From: Podarcis pityusensis
Taxonomy: Eukaryota
Assembly: GCA_964106645.2 (NCBI GenBank)
Contig: OZ067041.1
Length of the DNA: 64,000 bases
Strand: one strand, 5' to 3'
How positions within the stretch are numbered: position 1 is the first letter of the stretch; every line of letters starts with the position of its first letter. A program made the position numbers and the translations under genes. The notes beneath the pieces were generated by a model. It was not told the origin of the DNA, made no database searches, and saw only the letters and a program-made list of their open reading frames with translations. This document shows, one piece after another, positions 27,352 through 51,136 of the stretch.

Positions 27352-27500
27352 ATCATCAGAGAAGTTCCAAGCAAGCTCCACGATCACAGCCAAGAGACGA
27401 AGACTTTGAAGGAGCTCCGTGGAATTGTAAGAGCTGTACTTTTTTAAACCACCCAGCAATGAATCGCTGTGAGCAATGTGAAATGCCACGGTATGCCTGA
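27352..27500 (+). CDS. TAB3: TAB3 last coding exon (NZF/RanBP2-type zinc finger)
   Basis: [49 protein letters not shown], matching W-x-C-x2-C-TF-x-N-x6-C-x2-C. Acceptor tttctctgtag. Confidence 0.98.
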
Positions 27501-33362: not shown

Positions 33363-33368
33363 TTTATT
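33363..33368 (-). terminator. Candidate polyadenylation signal (AATAAA) of the CAP-Gly gene
   Basis: TTTATT on the + strand, ~170 nt past the stop codon at 33538. Confidence 0.5.
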
Positions 33369-33537
33369 TTCCAAAAAATACAATACTATAAAATGCTCAA
33401 ATACAACTTAATAAAAATGGAAGAAATACACTGATGAACAGAGTTCTAAACACTTTGTTTCTTCTTTGCACCAGAAGCACAATATATTGGAAGGCTTTAA
33501 AGTCCATGCATTCATTGTTCAGGATGTAGTGGAATCG

Positions 33538-33595
33538 TTATTCCCAGGCAATAATGATTTTGCTGAAGTTAACAAAAACTCCTTTGTTAGGTGCA
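33538..33595 (-). CDS. Uncharacterised CAP-Gly protein, last exon (end of CAP-Gly domain)
   Basis: Acceptor tttgttttccag. Phase 2 entry gives (C)APNKGVFVNFSKIIIAWE*, completing the YFxCxxxxGxFV CAP-Gly motif. Confidence 0.93.
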
Positions 33596-33870
33596 CTGGA
33601 AAACAAATTTTGAAAGTCAGTAATGTGGATATGGTTCTTTGACATGACTTTTTTACGACATAAAGTTAACTAACCAACAAGAGTTACAAACTCGGTGAAA
33701 GTTACTTCGATGGTCATGCAAACAGAAATCTGCTGCTGGACAGTGTTTTCTGTTTGGATTCTAAAAGGCCACAATTTAAAGACAACAAAGACATTTCTGC
33801 ATGACAGGGGAAAAATGCACAATTTTCTGTTAGTTGGAAACCCTTTACTATCTTTTAATTGTGACTTTAG

Positions 33871-33890
33871 TCTCTCTCTCTCTGTCTCTG

Positions 33891-33926
<36 letters not shown>

Positions 33927-33959
33927 TCTCTTTTTCTTTCTCTCTCCCCCCCCCCCCCC
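33871..33959. repeat. Compound (TC)n/(TCTCTG)n/poly-C microsatellite
   Basis: Seen directly. Confidence 0.9.
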
Positions 33960-36096
33960 GGGTGGAATATCTTTGCTGTTGAGGATAGTTTCCGTTTCAC
34001 CACTTTATCACCTATACTCTGGGAGATACAATAGTGGAGATGTATACTGTAGCACTGGTAGAGACAGGAAAAAATAAATTGAGGAAAGGATCAAGAAATG
34101 ATAAGGCATTGCTGAAAGTAGATATCAGGATTATTTGAGGGGATAGATAAACGCTCCCTGCAGCAATGAAGTTACAGCCATTGCTCAGGCGGTAAAGCTA
34201 GTATTAAAATTTGAAGAACACAGCATGGTTCAGACTTGGAATGGAGATACAAATTGCTAGAGATGGCCAATATGGTGCCTTCTAGGTGTTGGACTACAGC
34301 TCAGCAGGGATGCTGAGAGTTGTAGCTTAGCAACATCTGGAAAGCACTATTTTGGCTATTCCTGTTATAGGTTGTAGTTAATAGGCGATACATGCACTGT
34401 TCCAGTCACACAAAACTCTGAGGTTTCCAGCAATTTAAAAGCACTCATTTTTTACGTACTAGTTTTGTCCCCAGAAACTCCAGGAAAGCAAAGCCAGCTA
34501 ATGTTTTGAAAAGTGCACAAGCAAGAATACACACAACTCAGCTCCCTCTTAATTATTTTAAGTTATGAAAAAGCAAGACACAAGCCCCCATGCTTCCCTG
34601 AACTTGAAAATATTAAACTAATATGGATTTTGGAGTTTTAGTTGGCCTAGCAAATGCATTGCCCTAATACTGATTATGGAGAATGTGAGTTCCTTTTACA
34701 CCCCCCACAGAAGCCTCTGGCAGGCTTAATCTAGTCTGGAGGAGTTCTGCAAAGATTTATGCAGTCTGAAGAAAAACTAGAGGGTTCATGCACTTGCAAA
34801 TTTCAGCAACTTCTGCCAAAAAGAAGGAAAAGTAATTTTTAGATTCACCATAAGAATGAATTTGTTTTATACAAAGTGCCTCTGAACCCAAAGCACAGAA
34901 TGAAGTGGAAAGAACAACTCAGGTATATATATATATATATATATATATGCGCATGCACAAATATAAGGTGAATCTTGGGCTCATGCACACATCTTGTGTT
35001 TATAGAGCTACTTTAAACTATAGAATTTCTGAGTGCAAGCTTTTCTCTCTAGTGATGCACGAAGCAATTTGTTCTTTAGAATTTTCATAATGTCCATTAT
35101 ATAAAGGAAGTTCTCAGACATTTATAATACATAGATATAAAATAATTGATTAGAGGCAGAAAGTGGGCAGGAACAGGCATATATAGAGTGCCAGGAAAAC
35201 ATTACATTTTCAGGATTTTTCTCCTACATCCATTGCAATGCTTAATAGCACCAGTAAAACTTTTTTTTAGATTTATTACCCACTTCACCAGACAGACACA
35301 GGATGAGATACAAACAGTTTAAAACGAATTACAATCACAACGAGAGTGGGTTCTAGAAATATGTAATAATGCATAATGAAGGTGCCAGACACCTCTGTTG
35401 GGAGGGAATTCCAAACCTGCCACAATTATGGGAGTCAAACATTTAATACCTTGTAGTTGATGGTGTAAAGCATTTACACATGTTTTAAGTTGCGAATGGT
35501 GCATTTACAAAGCTCTGTGAGAATAATGCTTTTTAAATGTTTGATAACAGCACATTAATTTGCCATCACTCCAAATTAGGAGTACAAGGCATGGTTACTG
35601 TTTGATAAAGTGCAAAAAAATGTGAAATTCTAGTCTTGATGAGGTGGTGATACAGGATTTCCCACATACTTTGCTTTTTCCATATCTTGCAGGTGGGAGG
35701 ATGCAAGGTACTTGCATTCACACTGATATCAATGCTTAACACAATTTGCTACAGACAGTAGCTAAATCCTGAAGCTCTCATCAATAAAAAGTGAACTTAC
35801 TGCTATTGTTAGTTACATTCTAAGGAGCATGCCACGAACCCTGTCCTCACCAGTAATATATTCAATTGAGTAGTATAGCTTTTGTAATGTTGTATTTTGC
35901 ACAATACTTCAAAACCACAAACTTGCCAACACACATTTGTGATCCATTAGTGGTTGCATATTATGCACGGTAAAGGTAAAATGTTGAACAAGAAGACTGT
36001 GAAATTGCTTTATTTCTGCCCCTGGGGAAAATTGGGTTCGGGGTGGGAAAGGAAGATCTCAAATATACTATTGCCAGGTAGAAGAGTAAACATTAC

Positions 36097-36333
36097 CAAA
36101 GAAAGTAGCGTGTTCCTTGAAAAGTTCCATCATGCCTTCCTATTTGATCCCCTTCCAGCTCTATTCCAAGGTAGTCCTCTTCTCTCCCCAAAAGTGGTCC
36201 CAAATACTTAACAGTTCCCTTGCTGATTTTTCCTGCTGGGCATGAAAATTTCACTAGGTTTCCAACTTTCAAGTCTGTAACATTCCTGGGTGCAAATGGT
36301 CGTCTTGATAGTGCCGCCTTATCTAGACAAATC
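36097..36333 (-). CDS. Uncharacterised CAP-Gly protein, main CAP-Gly exon
   Basis: Acceptor aactttttatcccag, 237 nt, phase 2 to 2. Reads (R)ICLDKAALSRRPFAPRNVTDLKVGNLVKFSCPAGKISKGTVKYLGPLLGREEDYLGIELEGDQIGRHDGTFQGTRYFL(C). Donor TG|gtaatg. Confidence 0.95.
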
Positions 36334-38615
36334 CTGGGATAAAAAGTTGTAGAAAATCAATAGCTTTCCTTTAAAACGTAAGAGTCCTTTTTTTTTTGGT
36401 ACTCCAGCACAACTTTATTATTCAGACTCTTCATGATAACCAAAGAATCCTACATATCTTATGAACAAACTAGACATGACAGGGGAAACCTGGGACTGAA
36501 TCTCCCAACAACTTTTTGCAGAAACAAAATTGGATTGGGCCATGTTGCTGAGTGTTTACCCTCACAATTCCATTTCCTTCAGTCAGTGCCCCCTACCCCC
36601 AAGCCAATGTTAATTTGTAGGAAGCGCAAGGATAGACACCTATATTGTTCCCATCTTCTTCCCATTCTAGGGATAATCACAGTTCTGTAAATTTTTAAAT
36701 AGGAGAAATGCCCACAGGGGGAAATGATGGGTACAAAATGGGTGCCCATAGTTATCTCTCCTCTTCCTTGACAGCTTCACTGGATGGTATTTATATCGGT
36801 GAAATGACATGCAAGAAAATGGTTACACACCTCTCCCATAGTACTGTGGTTCTTGTACAATTTGTGGATCCACACTGCTGGTTTAAAGTGTATAAAAATA
36901 CCTGAGATGTGATCACAGATCTCTCACATCATGTCTACTTTGGCCCTTACAGGTACCTGAGAAAAACAGTTGTTTTCCTTGAACTTAAGTAAAAGAGCCA
37001 TGATTTTTTTTGGGGGGGGGGGTAACAATAACATCTGTTCAAATTCTTTATTCTAACATCATGTGGGAATCTTCATGCACAAAATTAGGGGACAGCTGGC
37101 TGCTATTTGGTCTGCAGAAGAAACAAGACACAGCCCTGCTATTCTGATGTAAGCCACAGCTCTGATGTTACAGGGAAGTTGCAAGAAAAATCTTTTATGT
37201 AGCAGGTTCTTTCAACTTCAACCAGTGGTAGCTGCTGTACACATTTTAACAAAATCAAACTCCTCTCTTGGCAAAACTTACTCTGTGTTTTAAACGGTAG
37301 TGATACATGAAAGAGACTGAGGACAAGCTGCTTCATTTGTCTCTAGGAAAGCAAGGAATTAATTATTATCCTTGTAAAGTATTTGTAAAGTAAAATCCTT
37401 GCAGTATTTGTGGAAGATTTGGATTTAGGTTTGTCCATGCCTCTCTTTAATAGCATTATAGAAGGTCTTTTTAACAACATTGCAGGACAGATAAGAAAGG
37501 CAAAGGAGGAGGCAGAGATCTAAAATGCTGTATGTGGGTCATGGAAGGGTCCTGGTCAGAAATAGAATATCGGTCATTGTTTTTAAGTGCTTTTATTCTA
37601 TGGTTTTGCCATAGGATCACCAGGTTTAATGAAGGGTGGGATAGAAATGAAATAGATTTTCACTGTACATAGCTTTGCCTTTTTTATGTGGAAATTGCAG
37701 AAATAAAGGGCCATATTCCCTCATGGCCAACTTTTCAAAGCCTGCATTCACGTGGTGTTAGGTCCAAAGGCAAAAGTGGGTGCAGCAATGGAAAAAATGC
37801 TTTATAAAATATGACACGTTCCAGACACACAAAGCCAAAGGCTTCTGCATGCACAGGCCCCTCTCTATTGCACCAAGCAGGCAAGCAAGGGGCATTAGCA
37901 CAACTCGAGGGCACATTCCACTCCAGCAGAATTACTTAGAGGGCGTGGAGTAGGGCTGGTGAGGTGTGTGACCTAGGGAGAGTCCTGAAGGGTTAGGGGT
38001 CCCCTTCCCCTGTGCTAAAGAGAATATTTGGTGGTGATCTTTTCCTGTCATTTGTAATGTTAAAACCATCATGCAGTAGGCTTGGATTGAGATTTAGGTA
38101 TGTTTTAGTGCCTATCTTGGTTTTGGCTTACTTAGCATTAAGGGACCCCCTATGCTACTGCTTCCCCTCCTATTCAGTGGATTTGCTGTGGCAGTCAGTG
38201 TACCCACAGTTGTCAATGCAACACCTGCCACTCATTCAGTTCCACGTAGTTCTCACAGCCCTACCTTTCTGAAGTGAGCCTAGCATTATAGCCATAAATT
38301 GAAACAATCCTAGCTGTTGCGTCTTGGAGCGCACAAAAGATCATGATTGATCTCATCTAATGTGCTGGCTGACATCTATACACAATCAGAGCAAAGGGGA
38401 AAGTCAGTCCTTGATCTTGTGATGAGCTCAAGCCCAGCAGACATGTTTCAGTGCTTTCCTGCTTTAGCTAGACTGTTGCTGAAGAGTTACTTGACCTTTT
38501 TGCATTCATTAAGTTGGCAGTACTACACAGTGTGGGGTCTCAACCTTTTTCTTTACAGCAGAAAACTACCGGTACATTTACAACACAATCATATTCACAT
38601 CCATTCAATTCTTAC

Positions 38616-38775
38616 CTGTTTGGATAATATTTATTGCAAGTGTCCACTTGAGAGACACCACTCGAAGATGAACTTGAGATGCTTTGATCATAGTTCTCAT
38701 GACTTGTTTGATTGTGTTGAGTAATGCAAGGAAAGTTGATGCTGCTCGCCTTTGTGACCTCTTCAGATGCATCAT
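38616..38775 (-). CDS. Uncharacterised CAP-Gly protein, Ser-rich linker exon
   Basis: 160 nt, phase 1 to 2. DASEEVTKASSINFPCITQHNQTSHENYDQSISSSSSSGVSQVDTCNKYYPN. Donor AG|gtaaga, and the phase matches the CAP-Gly exon. Confidence 0.8.
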
Positions 38776-39410
38776 CTTGATTAAAAAATAAATAAATTAC
38801 ACTGCAGACGTCTGATCTCCCTGGAGACCAAGAGATGTGATGATAGACTGCTCTGCCTCCTTTCTTTTAGCAAATGTTTGTGCCACTGGGGAAGTGGTAA
38901 TTCTGCATTGATTTGTTTTGGATGTTGTATGTGATGCCAATAAAAGGTTTACGAAATACGATTAAAAAAACATTAAAAAGCTGCTCGAAAATTTGGGTCA
39001 AATCTAGTTGCAAGGTTTTGTTCAAGGATGCCCAACTCAAATAGGTAATGTGGAACCAGTTCCCTACCAACAGATGCTCAGGGAATATTCTATAATTTTG
39101 TGTGCAAAAAACTAAAAAACCTTATCTCACCTCAGATACTTAAGTTGTAAAATTCTAGATATTTATCCTGGAAACCATTAAAGTGCATCAATCCATGGTT
39201 TGTTTGGTTGTTGTTTTTTACGAAAAATGCTAGAACACTGTAATTTGCATAGCCTGCTCCAGTGCAATCAGTTTGATCAAATGTCTCTTTACTTGCCACA
39301 CTTCTTGAACCCATATCGCTAATTTGAAAGGGGACAAGGGAAGAGACACTGATGTGGCCTCAGTCATTGGCTAGTCTGCTTCATAGCCCTGGAGATGTCA
39401 TTGGACGTAC

Positions 39411-39479
39411 TGGGGATTCTTGAAGGCCCTGATAAACTCCCAGGGCTAAAGGTTTGACTTTCCTGGTTATTTCTGTGCT
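39411..39479 (-). CDS. Uncharacterised CAP-Gly protein, symmetric (skippable) exon
   Basis: 69 nt, phase 1 to 1. EHRNNQESQTFSPGSLSGPSRIP. Acceptor catttttccaag, donor gtacgt. Confidence 0.55.
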
Positions 39480-39639
39480 CTTGGAAAAATGATATGGAGT
39501 TGCCAAAAGCACATTCGTTCAAATAATAAGATATACCACTACAGATATATTGTGACAACTCCAAGGATGAAAATAATAGTTAAATCTATTGGTCAGATAA
39601 GAATAGATAAGATAAGAATGGTCAGATAAGATAACCCTG

Positions 39640-39959
39640 AGATAATCTTCTGAGGCCCTTCTTTGTGTGCCTCCTCCACAACAGGTCCAGAGGGTGGCAA
39701 CACAAGAATGGGCCTTCTCTGCAGTGGCTTCCCATCTGTGAAATGCTCTCCCCAGGGAAGTTTGCCTGGTGCCTTCATTATACAACTTTAGGCGCCAGGC
39801 AAAAACATTCCTCTTTAACCAGGCCTTTGGTTGATTTGATTGACATCCTATGCCCTTTTACAAATATGGTGTGTGTGTGTGTATGTGTGTTACTGGGTTG
39901 TTGTTTTATTTTGATTATGTACTTTATGGTTTTATATTCATGCAGGCATATGGCAGTAT

Positions 39960-40007
<48 letters not shown>
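39640..40007 (+). mobile_element. LINE (L2/CR1-group) 3' fragment ending in an (AAT)n tail
   Basis: GGCCTTCTCTGCAGTGGCTTCCCATCTGTGAAATGCTCTCCC...GGCAAAAACATTCCT resembles the recurrent squamate LINE 3' end. About 15 AAT units at 39963-40007. A reverse-complement relative lies at ~1120-1335. Confidence 0.65.
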
Positions 40008-40564
40008 TAAATTGGACTCCCAGCTCCAAGGTTAGTCTTTTCTTCAGTTGTCTGTCTGAATGCCTTTATGATAATGTAAAATCCTTACATAGCCATCACA
40101 TTTTGTGGCTGTTTTGCCAGTACTGAAAACAGTATGTTGACCAATGTTCCTTTCCCCCATATTGGACGAATGCAGGGAGTCTACACTTTTGAGGTTCTTA
40201 ATTTATCCCAATCCAATAAAGCATGCAGATGCATTACTAAAAGCAATAACACCCAAGCTCAGAATTTTTCCTATATTTTGGGTCCACTGAAATCTGGCAT
40301 GTTTTGTGGGGAAAGGCCATAAAAAATAATGAATAATATCCAAAGCAAGGAATGTTTGGAGGAAGTATTTCACAACTCTAAGCAGCCAAATAGATCTTAC
40401 TTTTCACTGACTGCATAAAAAGAAAGCTGAAAACAGAAAACCAATTAAGTGATTTTTCTTTCCATATGAAGATTCATGGGAACATGCAGTATACTTTTTT
40501 ATTCTTTTCTGTGCTAACAAGGCAAAATAAGAAGATGTGCAATTGCATATTTTAATTACCATAC

Positions 40565-40690
40565 CTTTTAAGTCTCTGTTTTCTTTTGCTAGCCCTGTGT
40601 CACAGTATCCAGAAATCAGAAATTCTGTAGATTCACTATTTATGGATGATGGGGAAGAAGCATTTTTCCTAGAACGTTCTTGTATCTTTT
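40565..40690 (-). CDS. Uncharacterised CAP-Gly protein exon
   Basis: 126 nt, phase 1 to 1. EKIQERSRKNASSPSSINSESTEFLISGYCDTGLAKENRDLK. Acceptor tttttatctag, donor G|gtatgg. Confidence 0.8.
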
Positions 40691-42323
40691 CTAGATAAAA
40701 ATAAAAGCCTTGCTTATTATCAAATTCTGCTTAGATGTTTTAGATATTATAAAGCAATAATATTTCATTCAGTCAATCTTTTTAAATCACTGTTGATGCA
40801 GTCTATTAAAACTAAACTATTTTTTATTAAGCACTGATGCTTTAATTATTAAAATGATGTATTTTCAAAAAGTGAAATGTCTTTTCCGTTTGTTGGTTGA
40901 ATGTCTTCTGAAAGAGCAACTTCCTGCTTTATTATTAGTATTTTAAATTAAGATGTGAGAAATACACTTTGGCTTTAGTATAGCTGGGAACAGAATTGTC
41001 TTACTTATCACAGATGCCACATTTAAAATAAACTGTAATCAAATGAGTAACATTAGATACGCATTGGAAGAACTTAATGTAAAATAAATATACAAACTGC
41101 TGCTAGTTGCACTGATCTTCAAGCACTTTTAGTTTTAAGAAAGCTATTTTATAGCTATTTGCCATGATTCAGCATTGCTGTGACCGCAGTAGAAAGTTGA
41201 AGTCCCTTTTCTGTAGTGCTGGATCTCTTTTTGCTAACCATCAACTCTGACAGTATTAATTACCTGTTGAGGGTTAATCACCTTTACAGTTAATCAACAA
41301 ATACCTCTTCTGGCATTTCGAATTCCAATAAAGATTTGTTTTGGTGAATTTCACTGTGGTAGTATTGGTGTTAATGTTATAGCTTTGCCTCGGATAATTT
41401 ATAAATACTTGGGATAATTGTTGAGGGTATAAAGATGTACCTAATGACTAGAGACAAGATCTTTTAAAATGAAAACAGTCATTCTGGGCACAAACACAGA
41501 GGCAACCCAGAATGATGAGGTGATGTATATCTCAGACCTTTCTCTCCATGATAGGATTCATATTGAAGTTGGTGGTTGAAATCAAGTTCACTGTCACTAT
41601 ATCTTCAGTGATTATGATTATTGTTATTATTGTTATTATTATTGAAAACCTGTTAAATGCACTTTATCCTCTTAAGAAACCCCAGTACCAGGTCTATCTG
41701 ATTGCATGGCGAGTAGCAACTATTTTTTATATATCAGCCAGTGCACAATAGTGATGGATAGGGGCCTGTTATAGTCAGTCTTCCTCCTGTATTAGTTACA
41801 TTGCAGTGGACACATGATGAACCCATGCAGAAGAATGGGCTCAATGAGCAGTGGTGTAGCATGAGTTGCCAGCGCCCGGGGCCACACAGAGAGGGGGTGG
41901 GAGTGAGGGAAACGGACAGAGTATGCATGCACATTCAACTGCCTAATGGCATCTGCATCGCCCAGAAGATCACAGCTGCAGAGACAAGAAGAGTCGTTCC
42001 ATTGTCTGCAGAGGTCACTTCCTAGTTTGCACAGAGGAGCCATTTTCAACAGAGCCCAGTGATGGAACTGTGAATTGAGGCAGCTGTATTGAGGTGTTGA
42101 AATTTTGTGCCCCTAACAATTATGCACCTGGGACAACTGCCTCTGTGCCTGCCCATGCTACGCTACTGCCATGAAGCTCTGCTATAAAGTCATTGCTCAA
42201 AAGTAGCTGGTGTTAATGTTGTTAATGAGATGTGGCCTCCTATCTTTGCTGGAGCAACATACTGGGCTGTTTACTGATCATCGTAAGAACCCAAGCAATA
42301 TACCATAATGGTGGTTCCTTTAC

Positions 42324-42531
42324 CATCCTGTTTGTCAGCAACTGTATGCACGAGCCATTCATATTTCCTCTTTACATCCCATAGCTCTTCTTTCAGCCTG
42401 TGGTTTTCCTCATTCAGCTGGTGGCCGATTTCCCTCAGTCTCCTGGACTCAGCTCTTAGCTCACAAATCTCTTCATGCAAGGTCTGCTCATAAGTGTCTA
42501 CTGGATCATGTCTGCTGTGCATCCTATTGAT
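42324..42531 (-). CDS. Uncharacterised CAP-Gly protein, coiled-coil exon 2
   Basis: 208 nt, phase 0 to 1. INRMHSRHDPVDTYEQTLHEEICELRAESRRLREIGHQLNEENHRLKEELWDVKRKYEWLVHTVADKQD, with a heptad pattern. Alternative donor at 42304. Confidence 0.9.
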
Positions 42532-43192
42532 CTTTAGAGGGGGAAGAATTAGTTTAAATTGTGTTTTGATTCTTGATCATGAAGGAGGAAAGCAATAAAG
42601 AGTAGAAATCAACATATAAGAAATCAATTGTTTAAAGCAGAACTGATCACTTCTGAACTGCTGTAATTCCCAGGTTGGTTAAAGTTTTGCCTAATGGATT
42701 ATATTCATGTGCAGAGAAATTGCACAATGCACCCTACCTGGTCTTGTGCCAATGCAGACTGCAGGACAGGTTCTTATGTTTGAATTTCCCATGTAAAAAT
42801 AAATTCTAAGTCACATAAAATATTGCACGTCGCTTAGAGTTGCCGTGGCAAAGTAAGTGAACAACGAATTTAATAAACAAACAAACCAAACATGCAAGTA
42901 AAAAGGCCAGAACATTTTCTCTTCTGTGGTCCTTTTCTGCATGCAGTGAGTTTATCATTCTTTACGGCAGGGTTTAGCAGTGAATGTGTAAAATATGCAA
43001 TTATTTTATAAAACATTTAGGAGACAAATACATACTAAGAATGTTTAAGCTCACAGTCGTAGGCATAAAACAAATGAATATCACCCGTTGACTAATTATA
43101 GCTTTGGTTACTGTTTGATACATGATTAAATATATATTACCTGTCTTCTACCCCACTTAAAGAAAAACACAGGTTTAAAATTAAAGTATATA

Positions 43193-43810
43193 CCGTATTT
43201 TTCGCTCTACAGGACGCACTTTTCCCCCTTCTAAAATGAAGGGGAAATGTGTGTGCGTCCTATGGAGCGAAGACGCCATAGCCCCGCGACCCTCTCCCGG
43301 CTGGAGAGGTGACGCGCGGCTATGGCAGGAGCCTCTATAGCCGTGCATCACCTCTCCAGCTGGGAGAGCGCGCGCGGGGCTAAAGCAGCCCCCCGCGACC
43401 CTCTCCCGGCAGGAGAGGTGACGCGCGGCTATGGCAGGAGCCTCTCCGCTGTGCCTTTCCGCTGCTCCCTGACCTGCTCTTTGGGGCTGGTGGTGGGCTT
43501 CCCCCCGCCAGCCCCAAAGAGCAGGTCGAAAGGAACCTGAAGCCTGGAGAGCGAGAGGGGTCAGTGCACACCAACCCCTCTCGCTCTCCAGGCTTCCAAG
43601 GTAGCCGCCTGAATGCCCCTTAAACGGCACCTTGTTTTAGAGCGGGAAAACAAGAGGGGGAAAGTTCTCCCCCTCTCTGCGCAGCGCCTCCTGCCGCTTC
43701 GCTGAAGGGGCGCTGGGCAGAGAGGGGGGGGATTTTTTTTTCTTGTTCTCCCCCCTCTAAAACAAAGTCCGTCCTATTGTCCGGTGCATCCTATGGTGCG
43801 AAAAATACGG
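43193..43810. mobile_element. Tc1/mariner (pogo-like) non-autonomous element with internal repeats
   Basis: Perfect 13-bp TIRs CCGTATTTTTCGC ... GCGAAAAATACGG, TA flanks, CpG-rich interior. Confidence 0.9.
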
Positions 43811-43845
43811 TAAGTTATAATAAAGGATTGTCTCAGACCCCTTAC

Positions 43846-44021
43846 CTTTTTCTTCAGATTAAGATTTTCTTCGTTAGAGTCTGCTAACTTCTGCATATAG
43901 TCAGATTTTAATTGAGCCATTTCATTCTTCAGTTGTGAAATCTCCTCATCTGCCTTTGCTAGCTCTAAGACCGCAGTCTCATTGGCTTCTTGAAGATCGG
44001 TGATCTGGCTTTTAAGGTTTA
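43846..44021 (-). CDS. Uncharacterised CAP-Gly protein, coiled-coil exon 1
   Basis: 176 nt, phase 1 to 0. VNLKSQITDLQEANETAVLELAKADEEISQLKNEMAQLKSDYMQKLADSNEENLNLKKK. Donor AAG|gtaagg. Confidence 0.92.
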
Positions 44022-44811
44022 CTGTGTATCAATATGCAAAAATATTCAGTATGCATCGTCTAGTCACATTTAAGGCCTATTGTGCTTAAGACTTTAATGC
44101 AAGATACACTTACCTGGGGAGTAAGTCTCACTGAGCTTATTTCTCAGTAGACGTGCATAGGATTGCAACTCTCCTACTGAAATAAAAGGGACTTCAAAAT
44201 ACTTAGCTTGCATCCCAGGACTACACTTGTTTCTCAGAATGAATTAAAAGTGTGCATAAAAATACAGCCTTGATTGAATGGTGCCTAGTATTTGTAAAGG
44301 CATAGGATACGCACTTTGCGCAAAAGACTCATGCACTGCAGGGGTCGAACCAGATGACCCTCAGTGTCCCCTCCAACTCTGCAATTCTATGACTTTGACT
44401 TTGAGTACAGTTTTGGGGGAAAATTGTACAGCTTGAAATGGTTTGGGGTGGAAAGTTTGTTTACTTGAGTGCATTTAGAGATTTTAGCGGGGAAGGGGGA
44501 AATAATGCATTAAGATGATGCTTAAATTTATTGCCATAGTGTTGGCTGTTTGTAGTCAGTGTTAACCAATCAGTTGTGGGATTGTAGTGGTGCCGATAAC
44601 CTGAACACTCATCCTATAGTACTTAGAAGGAGTAGAACATGGTTTCAAGGTTTTTCTAAAATGCTATTTGAACTTTCACAGAAATTAATAAATGTGGATC
44701 ATCATGTGGACTGATGCATATAAAAACCAATTAGCACACATTCAAATGGAAATTAAAATAAAGGCACTGAATGTTGAATGATGAAATTAACAAGCCTACA
44801 TGACTTCATAC

Positions 44812-44899
44812 CAATCTGTTGCTGTAGAATTCCGGGAGAGTTGCATTCAAATTTTGGCAGGCTACAAGTTGACAGCTCTTCATTAAGAAATTCTATCTC
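44812..44899 (-). CDS. Uncharacterised CAP-Gly protein exon
   Basis: 88 nt, phase 0 to 1. EIEFLNEELSTCSLPKFECNSPGILQQQI. Acceptor is a long poly-T followed by AG, donor G|gtatga. Confidence 0.87.
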
Positions 44900-46339
44900 C
44901 TAAAAAAAAAAAAAAAAAATTGCATTAGTTTGTTCATTTGAAACATTCCAGTTTCAAAAACCACATTTTTTATTACACGGAGAAGATAAAAATATGGCAT
45001 TCTATTTGTAATTCTGAATATGTGAATTCTGAATTCTTAATATGTGCTTTCCCCATACTTCTGAGTTTTCTAAATTGATGTCTTACAATATATCTATATA
45101 AAGTCACACATACTTATATCCATCTGTGTGTGTGAGACACACACACACACACACACACATGAATGATGCAAACAAGTGGAGGCACTAACAATAAATGATT
45201 GGATTGATAAAATCTGGGAGTTTGCAACAACAGCAAAATTGGGACAACCTCTAAGAACAAAGGAAATAACAAGATATTTGAATACTGTATAATGCATTTT
45301 TTACATTCTTGCTTATAGTATGCCTCATCCTATCAATGAATATGAAATAAGTTCTCTATGTTCACTTTTGACTGAGCCTTCTTTGTAATTTAGGAAGAAA
45401 AACCCTGATCTATTATCTTGTATCTTATGTTTTTTATTATTAAGCTTTTATTTTTTCCACAAATTTACTTTGCATACTGGCATTCCCATACTTGTAAAAA
45501 TCGTCATTGTTATATTTTGAGAGTTCAAGTATTTATTTGGATAGCTTTTGTTTATTTTTGGTGTGGTATGCTATCTCTTAGATTCATTACTGGATAAAAC
45601 CTGTGGTTTTTCCATACCCATCCATTAGTTTGTTTAGCTGAGAAAACGTAAAGCTTAGAATTTTTGTCTTTGACTTTTGTTGCTCTGATTACTTTTCTTT
45701 TTTTCATTACTGGCTATGCGGTGGCATATAAGTGTTAAATACAAAAAAGTGATTTCTCTCCTCTCTATGTTTTCTTTTTACCCTTCTGTTCTTAAAGTTT
45801 CTGTGTGATAAGCTCCTAAAAACCTGTGCTTACAGCCCTCACTAAGAGTCTGCAGCAACTCACTCATTGGACTATTTTTATCTCTTGAGTTCCTGCCATT
45901 GCCATCTGTTTAGTGTACAATCAAGATTATCTATTTCGGAAGCATTTCAGTTCACTTGACTTGCCACTCCCCTGTTCAGAAGTCAAATCACGCAAGTACA
46001 CAACCGCTTCATTAATCTATTCAATCAATTGTTCTTTAAGTATACTGTATAATATGGAGGGAGGAAGCATAGGAATGGGGAATTACACGGTTTTTATTTC
46101 CCATGCCCCCACTTCTTTTAGAAGGTTTTGCTGGTGAGTTAATTGTAGCTTCACTCCTGCAGCTGTCATATGCCTATTTAAGAACAGAGCATTCTCTATT
46201 CGTTTTTGAATTTCATAGTATGCCAGAACTAAGGATAACAGCAAAGTGAAAGTGTTTCAGTTGATGAAGATGTTGACCTGGTGTGTGTAGAAAAGGAATG
46301 GAAAATAAAACTGCTGGTATCAGAACGCTGGTCTACTGA

Positions 46340-46870
46340 TCTGTGGTGTGACCACATTTGGAATATTCCGTACAGTTCTGGTACTCAAAAAGGATATTGC
46401 CAAGTTGGAAAAGGTCCTGAAAGGGGAGAAAGAGGTGCCATGACAGATGTTTACAAAATTACACGTGGCATGGAAAAAGTGGATAGAGAGAGGTCTTTCT
46501 CCCGCACTTATACGCTAGAACTCATGGAGATTCAATGAAGCTGGACTCAATGAAGGTTCAGGACAGGTAAAAGAAAGTACCTCTTCACTCAGTGCATAAA
46601 CAATAGGCCATGAAGCTGGATAGTTTTAAAAGGGGATGAGATAGATAAGGCTATCAGTGGCTACAAGCCATGATGGCTATGCTTTGCCTCCACCGTTGGA
46701 GGCAGTAATGCCTTTGAATACCAGTTGCTGGAAGCCACAGGATGGGAGAGTGCTTGTGCTCCAGTCATGTTTGGGGCTTTCCCACAGGCATTCAGATGGC
46801 TGCTTTGAGAATAGGATGCTGTACTAGATGGGCCATTGGCCTGATCCAGCAGGCTCTTCTTATGTTCTTA
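46340..46870 (+). mobile_element. CR1 LINE 3' fragment
   Basis: Degenerate CR1 RT C-terminus (…TDVYKITRGMEKVDRE…) and the 3' end GGCCTGATCCAGCAGGCTCTTCTTATGTTCTTA. Confidence 0.8.
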
Positions 46871-46915
46871 TAATGAAAGAAACTATATATATATAAAAAC
46901 ATGCAAATCGTTCAC

Positions 46916-47080
46916 CTTCCCATAAAGTTTGCCATCATCTGCGTGTGGACTCTGTCCATTCAACAGTACTTGACGTTTAGCCTGCACATTCTTCATGGGT
47001 TGATGAAATTCCTGTTTGTTCTCATCTGGAGATTTCAGCAGAAACTCTGACATTGCAGGAGACCTTCCTTTCTTTGTTAA
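46916..47080 (-). CDS. Uncharacterised CAP-Gly protein exon
   Basis: 165 nt, phase 0 to 0. LTKKGRSPAMSEFLLKSPDENKQEFHQPMKNVQAKRQVLLNGQSPHADDGKLYGK. Strong pyrimidine tract, donor AAG|gtgaac. Confidence 0.85.
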
Positions 47081-47678
47081 CTAACAAAAAAGGGAAAAAA
47101 GAAAGTCAAGAAGAAATTTCAAGTGTTTAATTTAATTTGTGCTGTGTAATGAGAACTGTTGCATGGTCCTGTATATTGTGACGCGTGCTGTATGTATTAA
47201 GAATAAAGCTCTTTTGTTTAAAAAACAAACAAACAAACCTGTGCATTTATACAGTATACAAAGATTGCATTTGTATATTATTATTATTTTTACTACTACT
47301 GAATTGATAGGATACTTTTCAGCTCCTCTGTGGTCCAGGTCCATTAAGCAGCTTATAGTTAACACAATACAAAACCCCCACAAAGATTATGAAATTATGA
47401 CAACTCTAATCCATATCTATGCAACATAAATGGTTCAAAAGAGCAAGTCAGGTGTTCATATACTAGATTCAAACTTCAGAAGTTTAGCCCTGTCTTGTGG
47501 CACCCTAAAGACTAAGAACTTCAACCTTGTTATTTCCAACAATCCTTAAAGAAAAACATTTTTTTTTACCATCTGAAATATGAACATTGAATATCTGAAA
47601 TATATGAATGATTAAAGCTTCTTATCGTATAAACAGCACAAAACTGAAGAACGATATACATTTAAACTTAGATGGTAC

Positions 47679-47716
47679 CTTCACTGCTGAGAAAAAGTCT
47701 GTGATTAGACATGTTA
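47679..47716 (-). CDS. Uncharacterised CAP-Gly protein, small exon
   Basis: 38 nt, phase 1 to 0. VTCLITDFFSAVK. Acceptor tttcatttacag, donor AAG|gtacca. Confidence 0.55.
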
Positions 47717-48471
47717 CTGTAAATGAAACACAGCAAGTGGATTGTTAAAACCATAACAAAGGATACGCTTCTCACATATCCATATAAAGCTTGCTTTATA
47801 ACCCTCAATTTGCTGATATCCATATATACTAATCTTTTGAAGATAAAGAAACTGCAGTGGTTGTAGGGTTCAGTAAAAACTTAGTGAAGATAATAAACAA
47901 ATGCAACATAAAAGTATCATTGGGGAAAATTCAGAGTGCTACAATGTAAGTGTGCTCAAAATGAGAAAAAGAGCAGAGAAATGCAAAATCTTGAAAACAC
48001 CAAACAGTTATATACATTCAGACAAAAATCCATGAAGTCTGCATTATACAAAGAGCTCCTAAATCTTGCATTGGTGAAACCAGTAAAAAATACTTCAGTT
48101 TCTGTAAAAAGAAAACAACGGTAGTGGCAGATAATCTTGATTTGGATTCTTCACATAAGCATAAGCATATATTTTGTGCTTCAGACATTGACTGAAATGT
48201 TTTATCACAGAGAAAGGGTTATTTTAAATATGTTGCTACCATATTTAATTTATGGTTGCTACCATAGTTTTTGTTTAGTGCTTGATGACGGCTCTATTCA
48301 TATTTTATAAAAAGAAAACCTTAATTTAACAGCACTTTACCATTTTACCTCTGCCGTTTTTTCTGGTTGGCCGGCTTTCATGATTCCACATCCAGCATCC
48401 CCAACAATCCTTGTGTAATGTCACTGCCCTCCATTTACATCAGAAAAGAGCTTTTGTGTTGGGAATCTAAC

Positions 48472-48538
48472 CATCATCAGGCCAGAAGGCAAGGCTATTG
48501 TCAAGAGGCACAGCTTGAGCAGCTGCTGCTGCAGCAGC
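48472..48538 (-). CDS. Uncharacterised CAP-Gly protein, small exon (tentative)
   Basis: 67 nt, phase 0 to 1. AAAAAAAQAVPLDNSLAFWPDD. It is needed to put the 38-nt exon in phase, although both could be skipped together in frame. Confidence 0.45.
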
Positions 48539-49389
48539 CTGGTTTAGCATGTCCAATGCAAAGAAAACAATGGAAAAAAGGAGGAAGCACTGGAGCTTGT
48601 AGAAAGATGTTCAAACACCTGGAATTTCTTCCTTCTCCCCGCTACCATCACCAGTGCTGCTTTTTGGAAGTTTTACATTTTAGTGCAGAGGCACATATAC
48701 CATTCAGACTTCAAAAAAATATTTGACCCTTCCAGTCTGCATGTAATCAAAACTATCACATATAAACAACCATAGTAACATTTACAAATATTTTCCTCAT
48801 TTTATGCTCTATTTTATGGGTTTCCATGGATTTCCTTTTAAAGACTTGAACTATTTGCAGATACCTAGAAGGCAAGTATAAATTGACCATATCATGCAAT
48901 AGCTGGGGCTGCTAATTATAGGCTGAATACAGCGTCCATTGTCATTAACCAAAACATACTATCCTCACACATTGCTTATTGAACTGTGGTATATGAGATG
49001 TATTTGGGCCAGCCAAACTAGAGGCAAACCTATCATTTTCAAATAAAGTACTAGTTCACAATTGATCCTCCCAAACACACATCTTAAGAAAAGGAAGTCA
49101 AGTATATTCTATTTTTTTAATGTCACCTCTCTGGAGTTTTTTTTTGAGGGAGATATTTTTGTTTTTTTCATTTCATATGCCAGGAACTTTATGCCTTCTT
49201 TCCCGATTGCCACTGTCAGTTATTTTATTATGAATGTCTTGCACAACCAAGGTTACAAGGACGAGCCCTTTCCACATATATATAGTTTGGATACTAATGA
49301 TTAGTAAATAAGCTGAACCACCATATCCAAACCTTCATGTTCCAAGTTTATCCCACGAAGCTGAATGTTGGAATATAACATAGTTAAAC

Positions 49390-49680
49390 TGTCGAATTCA
49401 CTCCCACAAGACGTAATGATGGCCAACAACGTGAGTTGCTTTAAAAGGGAACAGATGAATGGGTGATAAGGCTATCAAAGGCTACTTGCCATGATGGCTA
49501 TGTTTCTTCCTCCACAGTTGGAAGCAATCGGACTCTGAATACCAGTTGCTGGGAATCACCCATGGGGAGAGTGCTCTTGGGACCTCTTTGCAGCATCCCA
49601 TGGGCATCTGGTTTGCCATTATGAAAACAGGATGCTATGATGGATCTTTGGCATGATTTGGCAGGATTCTTATGTGCTTA
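49390..49680 (+). mobile_element. CR1 LINE 3' fragment
   Basis: Closely resembles the 3' half of the 46340-46870 copy (GATAAGGCTATC...GAATACCAGTTGCTGG...TTCTTATGTGCTTA). Confidence 0.75.
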
Positions 49681-49687
49681 GGAGTTA

Positions 49688-49946
49688 CCGTATTTTTTGC
49701 TCTATAAGACGCACCAGACCACAAGACGCACCTAGTTTTTGGAGGAGGAAAACAAGAAAAAAAATATTCTGAATCCCAAAAGCCAGAACAGCAAGAGGGA
49801 TCGCTACGCAGTGAAAGCAGAAATCCCTCTTGCTGTTCTGGCTTCTGGGATAGCTGCACAGCCTGCATTTGCTCCCTAAGTTGCACACAAATTTCCCCTT
49901 ACTTTTTAGAAGGGGAAAAGTGAGTCTTATAGAGCAAAAAATATGG
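49688..49946. mobile_element. Tc1/mariner-type MITE with internal palindrome
   Basis: TIRs CCGTATTTTTTGCTCTATAAGAC ... GTCTTATAGAGCAAAAAATATGG with TA flanks. Internal inverted repeat AAGCCAGAACAGCAAGAGGGA / TCCCTCTTGCTGTTCTGGCTT. Confidence 0.9.
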
Positions 49947-50023
49947 TAATATGCATAAAGTCCAGAAACATATGTAACATTTGAATTTATATGACACTAA
50001 AGAAAACAATTTTTTTAAAATAC

Positions 50024-50142
50024 CTTGTGATGATAAGAATTGCCTTCCCAACCATTTGACACGGCGATATTATGTAAGTTATTTGCTGATGCAGCAGCTG
50101 TCCAAAGCTGGTCAGTCAAACTTGAATCTTTTCTATCAGCTG
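50024..50142 (-). CDS. Uncharacterised CAP-Gly protein exon
   Basis: 119 nt, phase 1 to 0. AADRKDSSLTDQLWTAAASANNLHNIAVSNGWEGNSYHHK. Acceptor tcctttttcag, donor AAG|gtattt. Confidence 0.78.
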
Positions 50143-50235
50143 CTGAAAAAGGACATGTGAAGAACATTACGCAACTGAATCGTTCGTTCGTTCATTCAAA
50201 GAACCTAGTTAATTGTCCTAGTTACCTGAGTTATG

Positions 50236-50443
50236 AGCTGGCCTGCTTAAATGTTCTGGGAGCAGACCTGAGTGGAGACTAGGGCAGCAAGGGCAGCTCC
50301 CTGTCGTCCCCCCCAGCCAATGCGGATTGGTTCAGAATTCAAATCTGGGTCTGGTGGGACCCCAGAATGCACCATGACGGCCAGGTGGATGGGTTGTGTG
50401 TGAAGGAGCCACCACGCCAGGTCACAACCACTACCCACCCATG
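50236..50443. mobile_element. 208-bp insertion of unknown family flanked by 24-bp direct repeats
   Basis: ATTGTCCTAGTTACCTGAGTTATG is identical at 50212-50235 and 50444-50467. The insert is GC-richer than its flanks. Confidence 0.75.
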
Positions 50444-50457
50444 ATTGTCCTAGTTAC

Positions 50458-51136
50458 CTGAGTTATGTGCTTGATTAACTTGCATTCCAACATCTGGAAA
50501 CTTTTCTGTTCTTGGGTGCAGTATATGTTTGCACTGTGAACTATCTGAAGTTTTCTTTGAGTAGTTTGCATCTTTAGGGCTGGGTGATCCATTGTGTATT
50601 ACGGGAAAGGCTGTCCTGGAATCTGCAGTGTAAGCAGCACCTAAATTATGGTTGAGCATACGAGTACATACTTTGAAAGCAACTTCATCTCCAATTATAT
50701 CATCCACAACATCTTGGTTATTGTCTGATGAATCTTTATGTCCTCCTTCTGTGTTTTCTAGAGTGGCATCAGAAAAATGTGCCAGTGTGTTCTCTGATTG
50801 ACTAGATCTCAAAATTTTCCATTCAAGAGGTAGGAGAGAATGGGAAGAAGTTAAAGATAATATGCTATCAGCAGAGCCTCCTAACCTATACCGTGAGCGT
50901 CTCAAGGATTCTTCCTCCTGGCTAGGTAAAGCCCGTGGATCCCAATCTGTTATCAGCACAAGTGGCTCTTTCATTACTGGTTCTTTTTCAGTGTCAGTGT
51001 GAATGTTCTCCCTCGCAGTAGCTTCATCTTCAGCATCGCTGATAGTTCTCGGAGAAGCCAACCAATCATCTGTCCCTAGATGAGCTCCCGTCACAAGATC
51101 AGAGTTTTCTGTGGTTGCGTTCGATGTTGCCTCCAT
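50458..51136 (-). CDS. Uncharacterised CAP-Gly protein, large N-terminal exon with provisional start codon
   Basis: The 228-aa ORF of the track (MEATSNATTENS...QAHNS), with good Kozak context ACAATGG. Exon acceptor at 51181, donor CAG|gtaact in phase 1. Acidic and Ser-rich, probably disordered. Confidence 0.8.

What the first reader, a model, noticed from the sequence alone, without database searches (positions are those of the whole stretch)
33538..51136. Unnamed multi-exon gene encoding a coiled-coil protein with a single C-terminal CAP-Gly domain, tail-to-tail with TAB3
Seen: 13 GT-AG exons on the - strand join in consistent phase into a 2190-nt frame (~729 aa). It has a long acidic/Ser-rich N-terminus, a ~130-aa coiled coil (44021-42324), a Ser-rich linker and a complete CAP-Gly domain ending ...FSKIIIAWE*. 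The domain is absent from the ORF track because it is split across exons 36333-36097 and 33595-33538. Established: CAP-Gly domains bind EEY/F C-termini of alpha-tubulin, EB1 and CLIP-170. The named vertebrate carriers (CLIP1-4, DCTN1, TBCB, TBCE, CYLD, KIF13B, CEP350) have other architectures, such as N-terminal CAP-Gly, ankyrin, ubiquitin-like, LRR, USP or kinesin domains. Inference: this is a separate, uncharacterised microtubule/+TIP or centrosome/cilium linker that probably dimerises through the coiled coil.
Basis: partly seen in the sequence, partly recalled or inferred. Interest (0 to 1): 0.9.

Follow-up and report, generated by a model that had tools for sequence, protein, structure and literature searches.

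The report
Unnamed CAP-Gly gene lost in mammals
A real, expressed lizard gene next to TAB3 encodes a coiled-coil protein, predicted to pair up, that ends in a CAP-Gly domain of the kind that usually grips microtubule tails; it belongs to an old, never-studied family found here from molluscs to frogs and lizards but not in mammals, birds or teleosts.

Summary
The gene is real. Ten GT-AG exons on the minus strand (51136-33538) join in phase into 2016 nt, giving 671 aa. The same ten exons are used by Podarcis muralis LOC114596189 isoform X3. An eleventh exon (44176-44114, 63 nt) is an in-frame cassette. RNA reads and a spliced contig confirm junctions E7|E8, E8|E9 and E9|E10, which link the Ser-rich linker exons E7-E8 to the split CAP-Gly domain (Pfam 43.9 bits on exon 9 alone). 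A TAB2/3-type gene ends at 27497 on the plus strand, so the tail-to-tail layout holds.

Every relative found is an automatic "uncharacterized LOC" entry. They occur in cartilaginous fishes, non-teleost ray-finned fishes, coelacanth, amphibians, turtles and lizards, and also in molluscs, a brachiopod, a nemertean and an annelid. None was found in mammals, birds or teleosts. No named CAP-Gly protein is close (at most 40 bits, against 111-203 bits within the family).

Predictions give a disordered N-terminus, a parallel in-register coiled-coil dimer, and a confident, basic CAP-Gly fold carrying GRHDG in place of GKNDG. The best reading is a dimeric tether that captures acidic-aromatic C-terminal tails. 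The ligand is untested.

The parts
50458..51136 (-). Exon 1 (coding part): ATG at 51136, residues 1-226 plus 1 nt. Acidic, Ser/Thr-rich and predicted disordered. Carries the gnathostome-conserved Ser cluster (GGSxxSxxSxxS) and the DVVDDVIGDEV-like motif.
   Evidence: ORF; donor CAG|gtaact; 96% identical to the Podarcis orthologue; conserved motifs; pLDDT about 30.
50024..50142 (-). Exon 2, 119 nt, phase 2 in and 0 out.
46916..47080 (-). Exon 3, 165 nt, phase 0 in and 0 out.
   Evidence: (100% identical to P. lilfordi P0107).
44812..44899 (-). Exon 4, 88 nt; start of the conserved coiled-coil module.
44114..44176 (-). Alternative cassette exon, 63 nt (21 aa), in frame, with GT-AG sites; present in the 692-aa P. 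muralis isoform X1.
   Evidence: P0112 residues 351-372, 91% identical; sequence and splice sites.
43846..44021 (-). Exon 5, 176 nt: first long coiled-coil helix (LQQQI...QEANE...LAKADEEISQLK block).
   Evidence: helix 343-415 with pLDDT above 90.
42324..42531 (-). Exon 6, 208 nt: second coiled-coil helix (NHQLNEENHRLKEELWD block).
   Evidence: helix 422-485; in-register dimer contacts.
40565..40690 (-). Exon 7, 126 nt: end of the helix and the conserved N-x-S-P...S-T-E-x-L-x-x-G-Y motif.
   Evidence: The E7|E8 junction is seen as a loose end of 3 RNA reads at 38778 whose letters match 40568 onward.
38616..38775 (-). Exon 8, 160 nt: Ser-rich acidic linker.
   Evidence: Joint 36332/3|38615/6 appears in RNA runs X24 and X21 and in the X1 contig.
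36097..36333 (-). Exon 9, 237 nt: the RRPFAPR lead-in and most of the CAP-Gly domain, including the GRHDG loop.
   Evidence: Pfam CAP_GLY 43.9 bits; 94-98% identical to lacertid orthologues; joint 33595|36097 in RNA.
33538..33595 (-). Exon 10 (coding part), 58 nt: last strands of the CAP-Gly domain, C-terminus ...IIIAWE, stop TAA at 33540-33538.
   Evidence: The spliced 674-nt contig of run X1 covers E10-E9-E8.
33292..33537 (-). 3' UTR, at least down to 33292, with an AATAAA near 33368.
   Evidence: Sequence; the X1 contig reaches 33292.
27267..27497 (+). Neighbour, not part of the gene: last coding exon of a TAB2/3-type gene with its NZF zinc finger. This defines the tail-to-tail arrangement.
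   Evidence: Pattern scan; 63-66 bits to solved TAB3 and TAB2 NZF chains.

Best explanation
This is an intact, transcribed protein-coding gene of a lacertid lizard (closest to Podarcis). It is the orthologue of the unnamed LOC100495307 (Xenopus tropicalis) / LOC114596189 (Podarcis muralis) family.

The 671-aa product has three parts. The first is a roughly 300-aa disordered, acidic, Ser-rich N-terminal region. The second is a roughly 140-aa coiled coil, conserved in sequence, that is predicted to form a parallel in-register homodimer. The third, after a roughly 100-aa Ser-rich linker, is a basic 90-aa CAP-Gly module that ends at the protein's last residue.

Inferred mechanism: the dimer presents two flexibly tethered CAP-Gly domains. 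These capture acidic C-terminal tails ending in an aromatic residue, such as alpha-tubulin or EB-type EEY/F tails. That would attach whatever the conserved coiled coil and N-terminus bind to microtubules or their ends.

Shown: gene structure, splicing, family membership, domain fold, basic charge and conservation. Predicted: dimerisation. Inferred only: the ligand and the cellular site.
For: Gene and splicing. There are 10 GT-AG exons in consistent phase, 2016 nt with no stops. They are colinear with P0041 and P0107 at 93-100% identity per exon. Spliced RNA joints E7|E8, E8|E9 and E9|E10 are seen in runs on record as RNA, and in one contig that spans three exons.

Family. A phmmer search with exon 1 against 1.8 billion representatives finds only 9 proteins. 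Eight are 'uncharacterized' LOC entries from seven species, and three of the four long ones carry a C-terminal CAP_GLY domain. Further searches extend the family to chondrichthyans, bichir, sturgeon, gar, bowfin, coelacanth, frogs, caecilians, turtles and lizards, and to molluscs, Lingula, Lineus and Owenia.

Conserved modules. The C-terminal 90 aa are 48-53% identical between this lizard and molluscs, and 60-66% between coelacanth and molluscs. The vertebrate coiled-coil HMM hits Lingula at 1e-31 and oysters at 1e-26.

Fold. AlphaFold2 gives the module pLDDT 88, and Foldseek gives probability 1.0 to more than 30 solved CAP-Gly domains.

Charge. Median net charge is +6 and median pI 9.7 across 58 members.

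Loop. The motif is G-[KR]-H-[DN]-G. PMC3806363 states that Asn-to-His in GKNDG is conservative and does not affect peptide binding.

Dimer. ipSAE is 0.47 against a best control of 0.00. The mark was reached by 21 of 30 proteins solved as pairs of one chain and 0 of 23 solved as single chains. On eukaryotes it was reached by 17 of 29, but by only 1 of 7 with no older solved relative. The runs agree in at least 91% of contacts and the partner pLDDT is at least 77. Contacts such as 353-353 and 378-378 follow a heptad pattern.
Against: No binding or localisation data exist for any family member. In the HMMER alignment to p150Glued, Gly replaces the residue aligned with Phe in 'tlfatgkw', and Tyr replaces the Trp. 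I recall both as lining the tyrosine pocket; that is memory, not tested here. The same Gly and the DGTF-GTRYF-C block are shared with CYLD CAP-Gly3, which is the top hit by both sequence and structure and is not a tubulin-tail binder. Squamates have Arg where others have Lys in the loop. Annotated isoforms that skip exon 9, and so lack most of the domain, exist (P0055 and P0122). The dimer pass may partly reflect the predictor's memory of coiled coils in general.
Confidence: 0.6

Rival explanations
1. Same gene and same dimeric architecture, but the CAP-Gly module is a non-tubulin binder of the CYLD CAP-Gly3 type, recognising ubiquitin, a proline-rich motif or some other partner. The protein would then be a signalling or scaffolding adaptor rather than a microtubule tether.
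For: CYLD CAP-Gly3 is the best hit both by sequence (37.6-40.5 bits) and by structure (7owc_B, E 5.6e-5). Both have Gly where p150Glued has Phe, and both share the DGTF-GTRYF-C block. CYLD CAP-Gly3 binds the Ile44 patch of ubiquitin.
Against: The margin over p150Glued is negligible (40.5 against 40.0 bits). The family keeps a basic residue and His in the loop where CYLD has GCTDG. CYLD's ubiquitin binding uses a C-terminal helical extension, whereas this protein stops right after the last strand. The same paper concludes that ubiquitin binding seems restricted to CYLD. The strongly basic charge suits acidic tails.
Confidence: 0.22
2. It is a diverged orthologue or lineage-specific duplicate of a named CAP-Gly gene (CLIP1-4, CEP350, DCTN1 or KIF13B), as some automatic names such as 'CEP350-like' suggest.
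For: [quoted passage not shown]
Against: CEP350's CAP-Gly is among the weakest solved matches (25.9 bits). All named paralogues score at most 40 bits, against 111-203 bits inside the family. Pfam finds no ankyrin, USP, kinesin, LRR or UBL domain. The family has its own conserved position between GK and TAB3, and its own coiled-coil signature reaching back to lophotrochozoans.
Confidence: 0.03
3. The exons are 3' exons of the upstream glycerol kinase gene, as in the records named 'glycerol kinase isoform X1-X5' in Podarcis raffonei and the GK/CAP-Gly fusion models in Polypterus and Acipenser.
For: Fused or mis-named records exist: P0055, P0110 and P0114 (P. raffonei), and P0060 and P0105, which carry PF00370 + PF02782 + PF01302.
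Against: The 671-aa 'glycerol kinase' records map only to the ten exons described here and start at the same ATG. P0041 carries only CAP_GLY in Pfam. The N-terminal region starting at that ATG is conserved from sharks to lizards. No GK exon lies in the window.
Confidence: 0.03
4. The locus is a decaying relic in this lizard, on the way to the loss seen in mammals and birds.
For: The gene has been lost repeatedly in other lineages. RNA depth in the runs sampled is low.
Against: All ten exons are open with intact splice sites. The transcript is correctly spliced. Identity to other lacertids is 94-100% in the conserved modules.
Confidence: 0.02

Closest known systems
The unnamed orthogroup itself: X. 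tropicalis LOC100495307, P. muralis LOC114596189, Anolis carolinensis LOC103278344, Callorhinchus LOC103186410, Latimeria LOC106703278
   Same: Same gene. It has the same ten exons (P0041), the same N-terminal motifs, the same coiled coil, and the same C-terminal module ending in MAW[ED]. By the evidence of fused annotations it also keeps the same neighbourhood, GK - gene - TAB3.
   Different: Nothing of substance. These entries are 'known' only as automatic predictions and as rows in the WINEGRET supplementary tables (PMC10416458). [quoted passage not shown]
CLIP-170 / CLIP1 family
   Same: A CAP-Gly domain, Ser-rich regions and a long coiled coil. The general logic is a dimer presenting two tail-capturing heads.
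   Different: Orientation is reversed: one CAP-Gly at the extreme C-terminus instead of two at the N-terminus. Pfam finds no second domain such as a zinc knuckle, and the protein ends AWE rather than ETF. The loop is GRHDG, not GKNDG. Similarity is only about 30-36 bits.
CYLD, third CAP-Gly domain
   Same: Best sequence and fold match. It shares a Gly in the loop before the central strand and the DGTF-GTRYF-C block.
   Different: There is no USP domain and only a single CAP-Gly. A basic residue and His are kept in the loop where CYLD has GCTDG. The C-terminal helices that CYLD uses to hold ubiquitin are absent.
p150Glued (DCTN1)
   Same: One basic CAP-Gly domain attached to a dimeric coiled coil; 40 bits, essentially tied with CYLD.
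   Different: The p150Glued domain is N-terminal, has the canonical GKNDG, and has Phe and Trp where this family has Gly and Tyr. It is a dynactin subunit with a wholly different remainder.
KIF13B and CEP350
   Same: The CAP-Gly domain lies towards the C-terminus.
   Different: Their CAP-Gly domains are among the weaker matches, 26-32 bits. The 'CEP350-like' labels on some family members are automatic and not borne out.

Membership tests
CAP-Gly domain superfamily (Pfam PF01302) | Match to the CAP_GLY profile above the curated cut-off | tested here: met
   43.9 bits on exon 9 alone, cut-off 26.5; 60.3 bits on the near-identical full-length orthologue P0041.
CAP-Gly domain superfamily (Pfam PF01302) | CAP-Gly fold | tested here: met
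   AlphaFold2 model of P0041:572-671 (94-98% identical to the window's exons 9-10) has pLDDT 88. Foldseek gives probability 1.0 to more than 30 solved CAP-Gly domains.
CAP-Gly domain superfamily (Pfam PF01302) | GKNDG tail-binding loop | tested here: inconclusive
   The window has GRHDG and the family has G-[KR]-H-[DN]-G. Asn-to-His is reported as tolerated (PMC3806363). Lys-to-Arg in squamates is untested.
CAP-Gly domain superfamily (Pfam PF01302) | Binding of EEY/F C-terminal tails or microtubules | not testable with these tools
   Needs peptide-binding or co-sedimentation assays.
CLIP family (CLIP1-4) | N-terminal CAP-Gly domain(s), with zinc knuckles (CLIP1/2) or ankyrin repeats (CLIP3/4) | tested here: not met
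   A single CAP-Gly at residues 610-666 of 671 and no other Pfam domain.
CEP350 | Closest similarity of the CAP-Gly domain to CEP350's, within a very large protein | tested here: not met
   2coz scores 25.9 bits, below CYLD, DCTN1, CLIP and TBCB. The protein is 671 aa.
CYLD | USP catalytic domain and three CAP-Gly domains | tested here: not met
   Pfam finds only one CAP_GLY domain.
Unnamed LOC100495307 orthogroup | C-terminal module RPFAPR ... G-[KR]-H-[DN]-G ... F-x-K-[IV]-[IV]-x-A-W-[ED] ending the protein | tested here: met
   Window exons 9-10 compared with the 58-member alignment.
Unnamed LOC100495307 orthogroup | Conserved coiled-coil signature (QEANE...LAKADEEISQLK; NHQLNEENHRLKEELWD) | tested here: met
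   Window exons 5-6 compared with the alignments. The HMM also reaches invertebrates.
Unnamed LOC100495307 orthogroup | Position between GK and TAB3, convergent with TAB3 | tested here: inconclusive
   The TAB2/3-type neighbour is confirmed. GK lies outside the window and is inferred only from fused or mis-named annotations.

The most novel reading that the evidence does not exclude
This is an eleventh CAP-Gly lineage, dating back at least to the protostome-deuterostome ancestor. Its sequence-conserved coiled coil is a docking site for a specific, still unknown partner. Its atypical CAP-Gly pocket (Gly and Tyr in place of Phe and Trp, His in the loop) reads a tail other than the classical EEY/F. 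Its repeated loss in mammals, birds and teleosts would then mark a dispensable microtubule- or signalling-linked pathway that no mammalian model can reveal.
Probability: 0.25. Interest if true: 0.7.

Novelty: new member of a known kind. Interest (0 to 1): 0.5.

Why it matters
CAP-Gly proteins are a small, heavily studied set: CLIPs, p150Glued, the tubulin chaperones TBCB and TBCE, CYLD, KIF13B and CEP350. This work shows a further family with its own architecture. It is under strong constraint, with its two modules kept from lophotrochozoans to vertebrates, yet it was not found in mammals, birds or teleosts. That probably explains why it has never been studied. Xenopus has it (LOC100495307), so localisation, binding and knock-out tests are straightforward. 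The family also offers a natural case of repeated loss of a conserved cytoskeletal-type gene. On a practical level, several public records mislabel it as glycerol kinase, CEP350-like or myosin-like.

Tried and rejected
- Pfam on exon 1 and on the coiled-coil exons gave nothing above cut-off, only generic coiled-coil noise.
- The ESM Atlas search of residues 1-480 gave only hits below 0.9, used as leads only. One was a rotifer CAP-Gly cluster at 0.85.
- Full-length AlphaFold2 with 26 sequences left the CAP-Gly region at pLDDT 50-62. The domain folded confidently only when run alone with 58 sequences.
Only the 63-nt cassette was found.
- The N-terminal extension of the 741-aa P. lilfordi model maps only as read-through of the 5' leader just above the ATG. 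The rest is not in the window, so I treated it as a doubtful annotation.
- An SxIP-like SLLP in exon 1 is not conserved outside squamates, so I dropped it.
- Literature searches for twelve LOC ids found no paper text. Searches on CAP-Gly with GK or TAB3, and on CAP-Gly with 'lost in mammals', found no description of the family.
- The search of earlier findings returned nothing for this place.
Bit-score gaps stand in for it.
- The spliced protein of the window was never sent to a search, fold or complex tool. Exons were searched one by one by reference, and the public orthologues P0041 and P0107 (93-100% identical per exon) stood in for folding and the dimer test.


Full report
**What is in the sequence**

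Exon 36333-36097 reads ...RRPFAPRNVTDLKVGNLVKF...GRHDGTFQGTRYFL, and exon 33595-33538 reads ...APNKGVFVNFSKIIIAWE followed by a stop. The split codon TGT supplies the conserved Cys of the YFLC motif. Pfam scores exon 9 alone at 43.9 bits for CAP_GLY, against a cut-off of 26.5. The acceptor ttttccag|T at 33595, the TAA stop at 33540-33538 and an AATAAA near 33368 are all visible. The first coding exon opens at the ATG at 51136.

**Gene model**

I mapped public orthologues onto the window with tblastn. I then listed GT/AG sites and phases. Ten exons fit:

- 51136-50458
- 50142-50024
- 47080-46916
- 44899-44812
- 44021-43846
- 42531-42324
- 40690-40565
- 38775-38616
- 36333-36097
- 33595-33538

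All ten have AG/GT boundaries and compatible phases. None has an internal stop. Together they total 2016 nt, giving 671 aa. Podarcis muralis LOC114596189 isoform X3 (P0041, 671 aa) aligns to exactly these ten exons at 93-100% identity. P. lilfordi P0107 aligns at 97-100% in most exons. The window therefore comes from a lacertid lizard close to Podarcis.

An eleventh exon at 44176-44114 (63 nt, with GT-AG sites) is an in-frame cassette used by the 692-aa isoform X1. The total of 13 exons and 729 aa is not reproduced, and 111 nt of that model have no counterpart in any orthologue.

I did not send a joined protein of the window to any search, fold or complex tool. Exons were searched by reference, and near-identical public orthologues stood in where a whole protein was needed.

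**Expression**

I laid reads from four runs of a closely related organism on 33250-39249; most reads were 95-99% alike.

- The joint 33595|36097 is seen in 5 reads of a single-cell RNA run and in a contig.
- The joint 36332/3|38615/6 is seen in two RNA runs and in the same contig.
- That 674-nt contig runs 33292-33595, 36097-36332 and 38615-38748, which is exons 10, 9 and 8 spliced together.
- Three reads that end at 38778 continue with letters that match 40568 onward, which is the E7|E8 junction.

The CAP-Gly exons are therefore spliced to the upstream Ser-rich linker exons E7-E8 in real transcripts. No read joined them to a coiled-coil exon: exon 7, which holds the last residues of the predicted helix, lay outside the stretch and was reached only through the loose end, and exons 5 and 6 lay outside it too. 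Depth was low, and the tissues are unknown because the run records are coded.

**Neighbour**

The plus strand carries a large Pro/Ser/Gln-rich exon at 15349-16827. It also carries a last coding exon at 27267-27497 ending in an NZF zinc finger. That finger scores 63-66 bits against the solved TAB3 and TAB2 NZF chains. The two genes converge, so 'tail-to-tail' is right. Calling the neighbour TAB3 rather than TAB2 rests on synteny with GK and is an inference.

**Family**

A phmmer search with exon 1 against 1.84 billion representatives finds only nine proteins. Eight of them were looked up. All are 'uncharacterized protein LOC...' entries, from Varanus, Anolis, turtles (two), a caecilian, Xenopus tropicalis (LOC100495307) and Latimeria. 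Three of the four long ones carry a C-terminal CAP_GLY domain.

A profile search and two domain searches widen the range. Among vertebrates the family occurs in sharks, rays and chimaera, bichir, sturgeon, paddlefish, gar, bowfin, many frogs, caecilians, turtles and lizards. Among invertebrates it occurs in gastropods, bivalves, the brachiopod Lingula, the nemertean Lineus and the annelid Owenia. Two weevil proteins look like diverged members. None of the three searches returned a mammal, bird or teleost; crocodilians and snakes were also absent from the hits.

A published synteny-aware screen agrees independently. [quoted passage not shown] The orthologue ids given there are the same Anolis, Chrysemys, Pogona, Callorhinchus and Latimeria genes I found. 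The same tables list the gene as differentially expressed between the 0 h and 72 h samples of a tadpole tail regeneration series, with log2 change -2.8 and p 5e-4 (PMC10416458). No paper text in the library mentions any of twelve LOC ids.

Several records fuse or confuse the gene with glycerol kinase. This places GK as the upstream neighbour on the same strand.

**What is conserved**

Two modules are ancient.

- The C-terminal 90 aa run from RPFAPR to ...MAW[ED] at the very end of the protein. Identity is 60-66% between coelacanth and molluscs, and 48-53% between this lizard and molluscs.
- The coiled coil is conserved in sequence, not just in heptad pattern. An HMM built from vertebrates hits Lingula at 1e-31, Owenia at 2e-27 and oysters at 1e-26.

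The N-terminal Ser cluster, the DVVDDVIGDEV motif and the linker motifs are confined to jawed vertebrates.

**Relation to named CAP-Gly proteins**

Against all solved structures the module scores at most 37.6-40.5 bits. CYLD CAP-Gly3, p150Glued, CLIPR-59, CLIP-115 and CLIP-170 all fall within a few bits of each other. TBCB, TBCE, KIF13B, CLIP4 and CEP350 score lower. Within the family the same stretch scores 111-203 bits. The gene is therefore not an orthologue of any named gene.

**Structure predictions**

The full-length AlphaFold2 model of P0041 shows residues 1-296 at pLDDT about 30. It shows two long helices at 343-415 and 422-485 with pLDDT above 90.

Two copies of residues 335-480 were tested with controls.

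- The score was 0.47, against a best control of 0.00.
- The mark was reached by 21 of 30 proteins solved as pairs of one chain and 0 of 23 solved as single chains.
- On eukaryotes it was reached by 17 of 29, but by only 1 of 7 with no older solved relative.
- The runs agree in at least 91% of contacts, and the partner pLDDT is at least 77.
- The contacts are in register (353-353, 378-378, 452-452) with heptad spacing, which indicates a parallel dimer.

The C-terminal module folded alone with 58 sequences reaches pLDDT 88. It matches more than 30 solved CAP-Gly domains. CYLD CAP-Gly3 and TBCB are the top matches.

**What the domain is likely to bind**

Points for the classical role:

- The module is basic throughout the family, with median net charge +6 and median pI 9.7.
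- The loop is G-[KR]-H-[DN]-G. An Asn-to-His change in GKNDG is reported as conservative for tail binding (PMC3806363).

Points against a simple transfer of function:

- The alignment to p150Glued puts Gly where p150 has Phe, and Tyr where it has Trp. I recall these as pocket residues; I did not test this.
- CYLD CAP-Gly3 shares that Gly, and it binds ubiquitin rather than tubulin tails.
- That CYLD binding mode, however, needs C-terminal helices, and this protein ends right after its last strand.

I put the tail-capturing microtubule-tether reading at about one half and a different ligand at about one fifth. The gene model and family assignment are close to certain.

**Verdict**

The microtubule role is plausible but not shown. 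The gene is already predicted by annotation pipelines, so the window itself adds no new kind of element. What is worth recording is the family: it is ancient and constrained, it is apparently missing from mammals, birds and teleosts, it is mislabelled in several databases, and it can be tested in Xenopus.

Noticed in passing
window 15349-16827 (+) and 27267-27497 (+): Exons of a TAB2/3-type gene. One is a large Pro/Ser/Gln-rich exon. The other is the last coding exon, with the NZF zinc finger (63-66 bits to solved TAB3 and TAB2 NZF chains).
   Followed up: partly
window 2001-4000: GC-rich stretch (GC 0.55 against about 0.40 elsewhere) with long overlapping ORFs on both strands. It looks like a CpG island and could be the promoter or first exon of the TAB2/3-type gene.
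   Followed up: no
window 51541-51723 (-) and 54388-54870 (-): Open frames that look like reverse-transcriptase fragments of CR1-type LINEs, lying upstream of the CAP-Gly gene.
   Followed up: no
window 38794-38954: A stretch in intron 7, just upstream of the exon 8 acceptor. It has much higher RNA depth than the exons, and many reads run on into unrelated sequence. This suggests a dispersed repeat transcribed elsewhere. No second copy lies in the window.
   Followed up: partly
window 43100-43700: GC-rich segment in intron 5 that holds a 149-aa chance ORF. It is made of local direct and inverted repeats, and one piece recurs at 49868-49948.
   Followed up: partly
window 33865-33966 and 34916-34960: Simple repeats in intron 9. 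The first is a GA/TC-rich run that reads as Arg-Glu/Asp repeats in one frame. The reads tool flagged and skipped both.
   Followed up: no
public records P0055, P0110, P0113, P0114, P0120 (Podarcis raffonei); P0060 (Polypterus); P0105 (Acipenser): Orthologues of this gene are named 'glycerol kinase isoform X...' or are fused to GK domains. This is evidently an annotation merge of neighbouring genes. Other members are auto-named CEP350-like, myosin-11-like, golgin A5-like or futsch-like.
   Followed up: partly
isoforms P0055, P0122, P0123, mapped to window exon 8 joined to exon 10: Annotated lacertid isoforms skip exon 9 (237 nt, in frame) and so lack most of the CAP-Gly domain. No such joint reached the listing threshold in the reads laid here.
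   Followed up: partly
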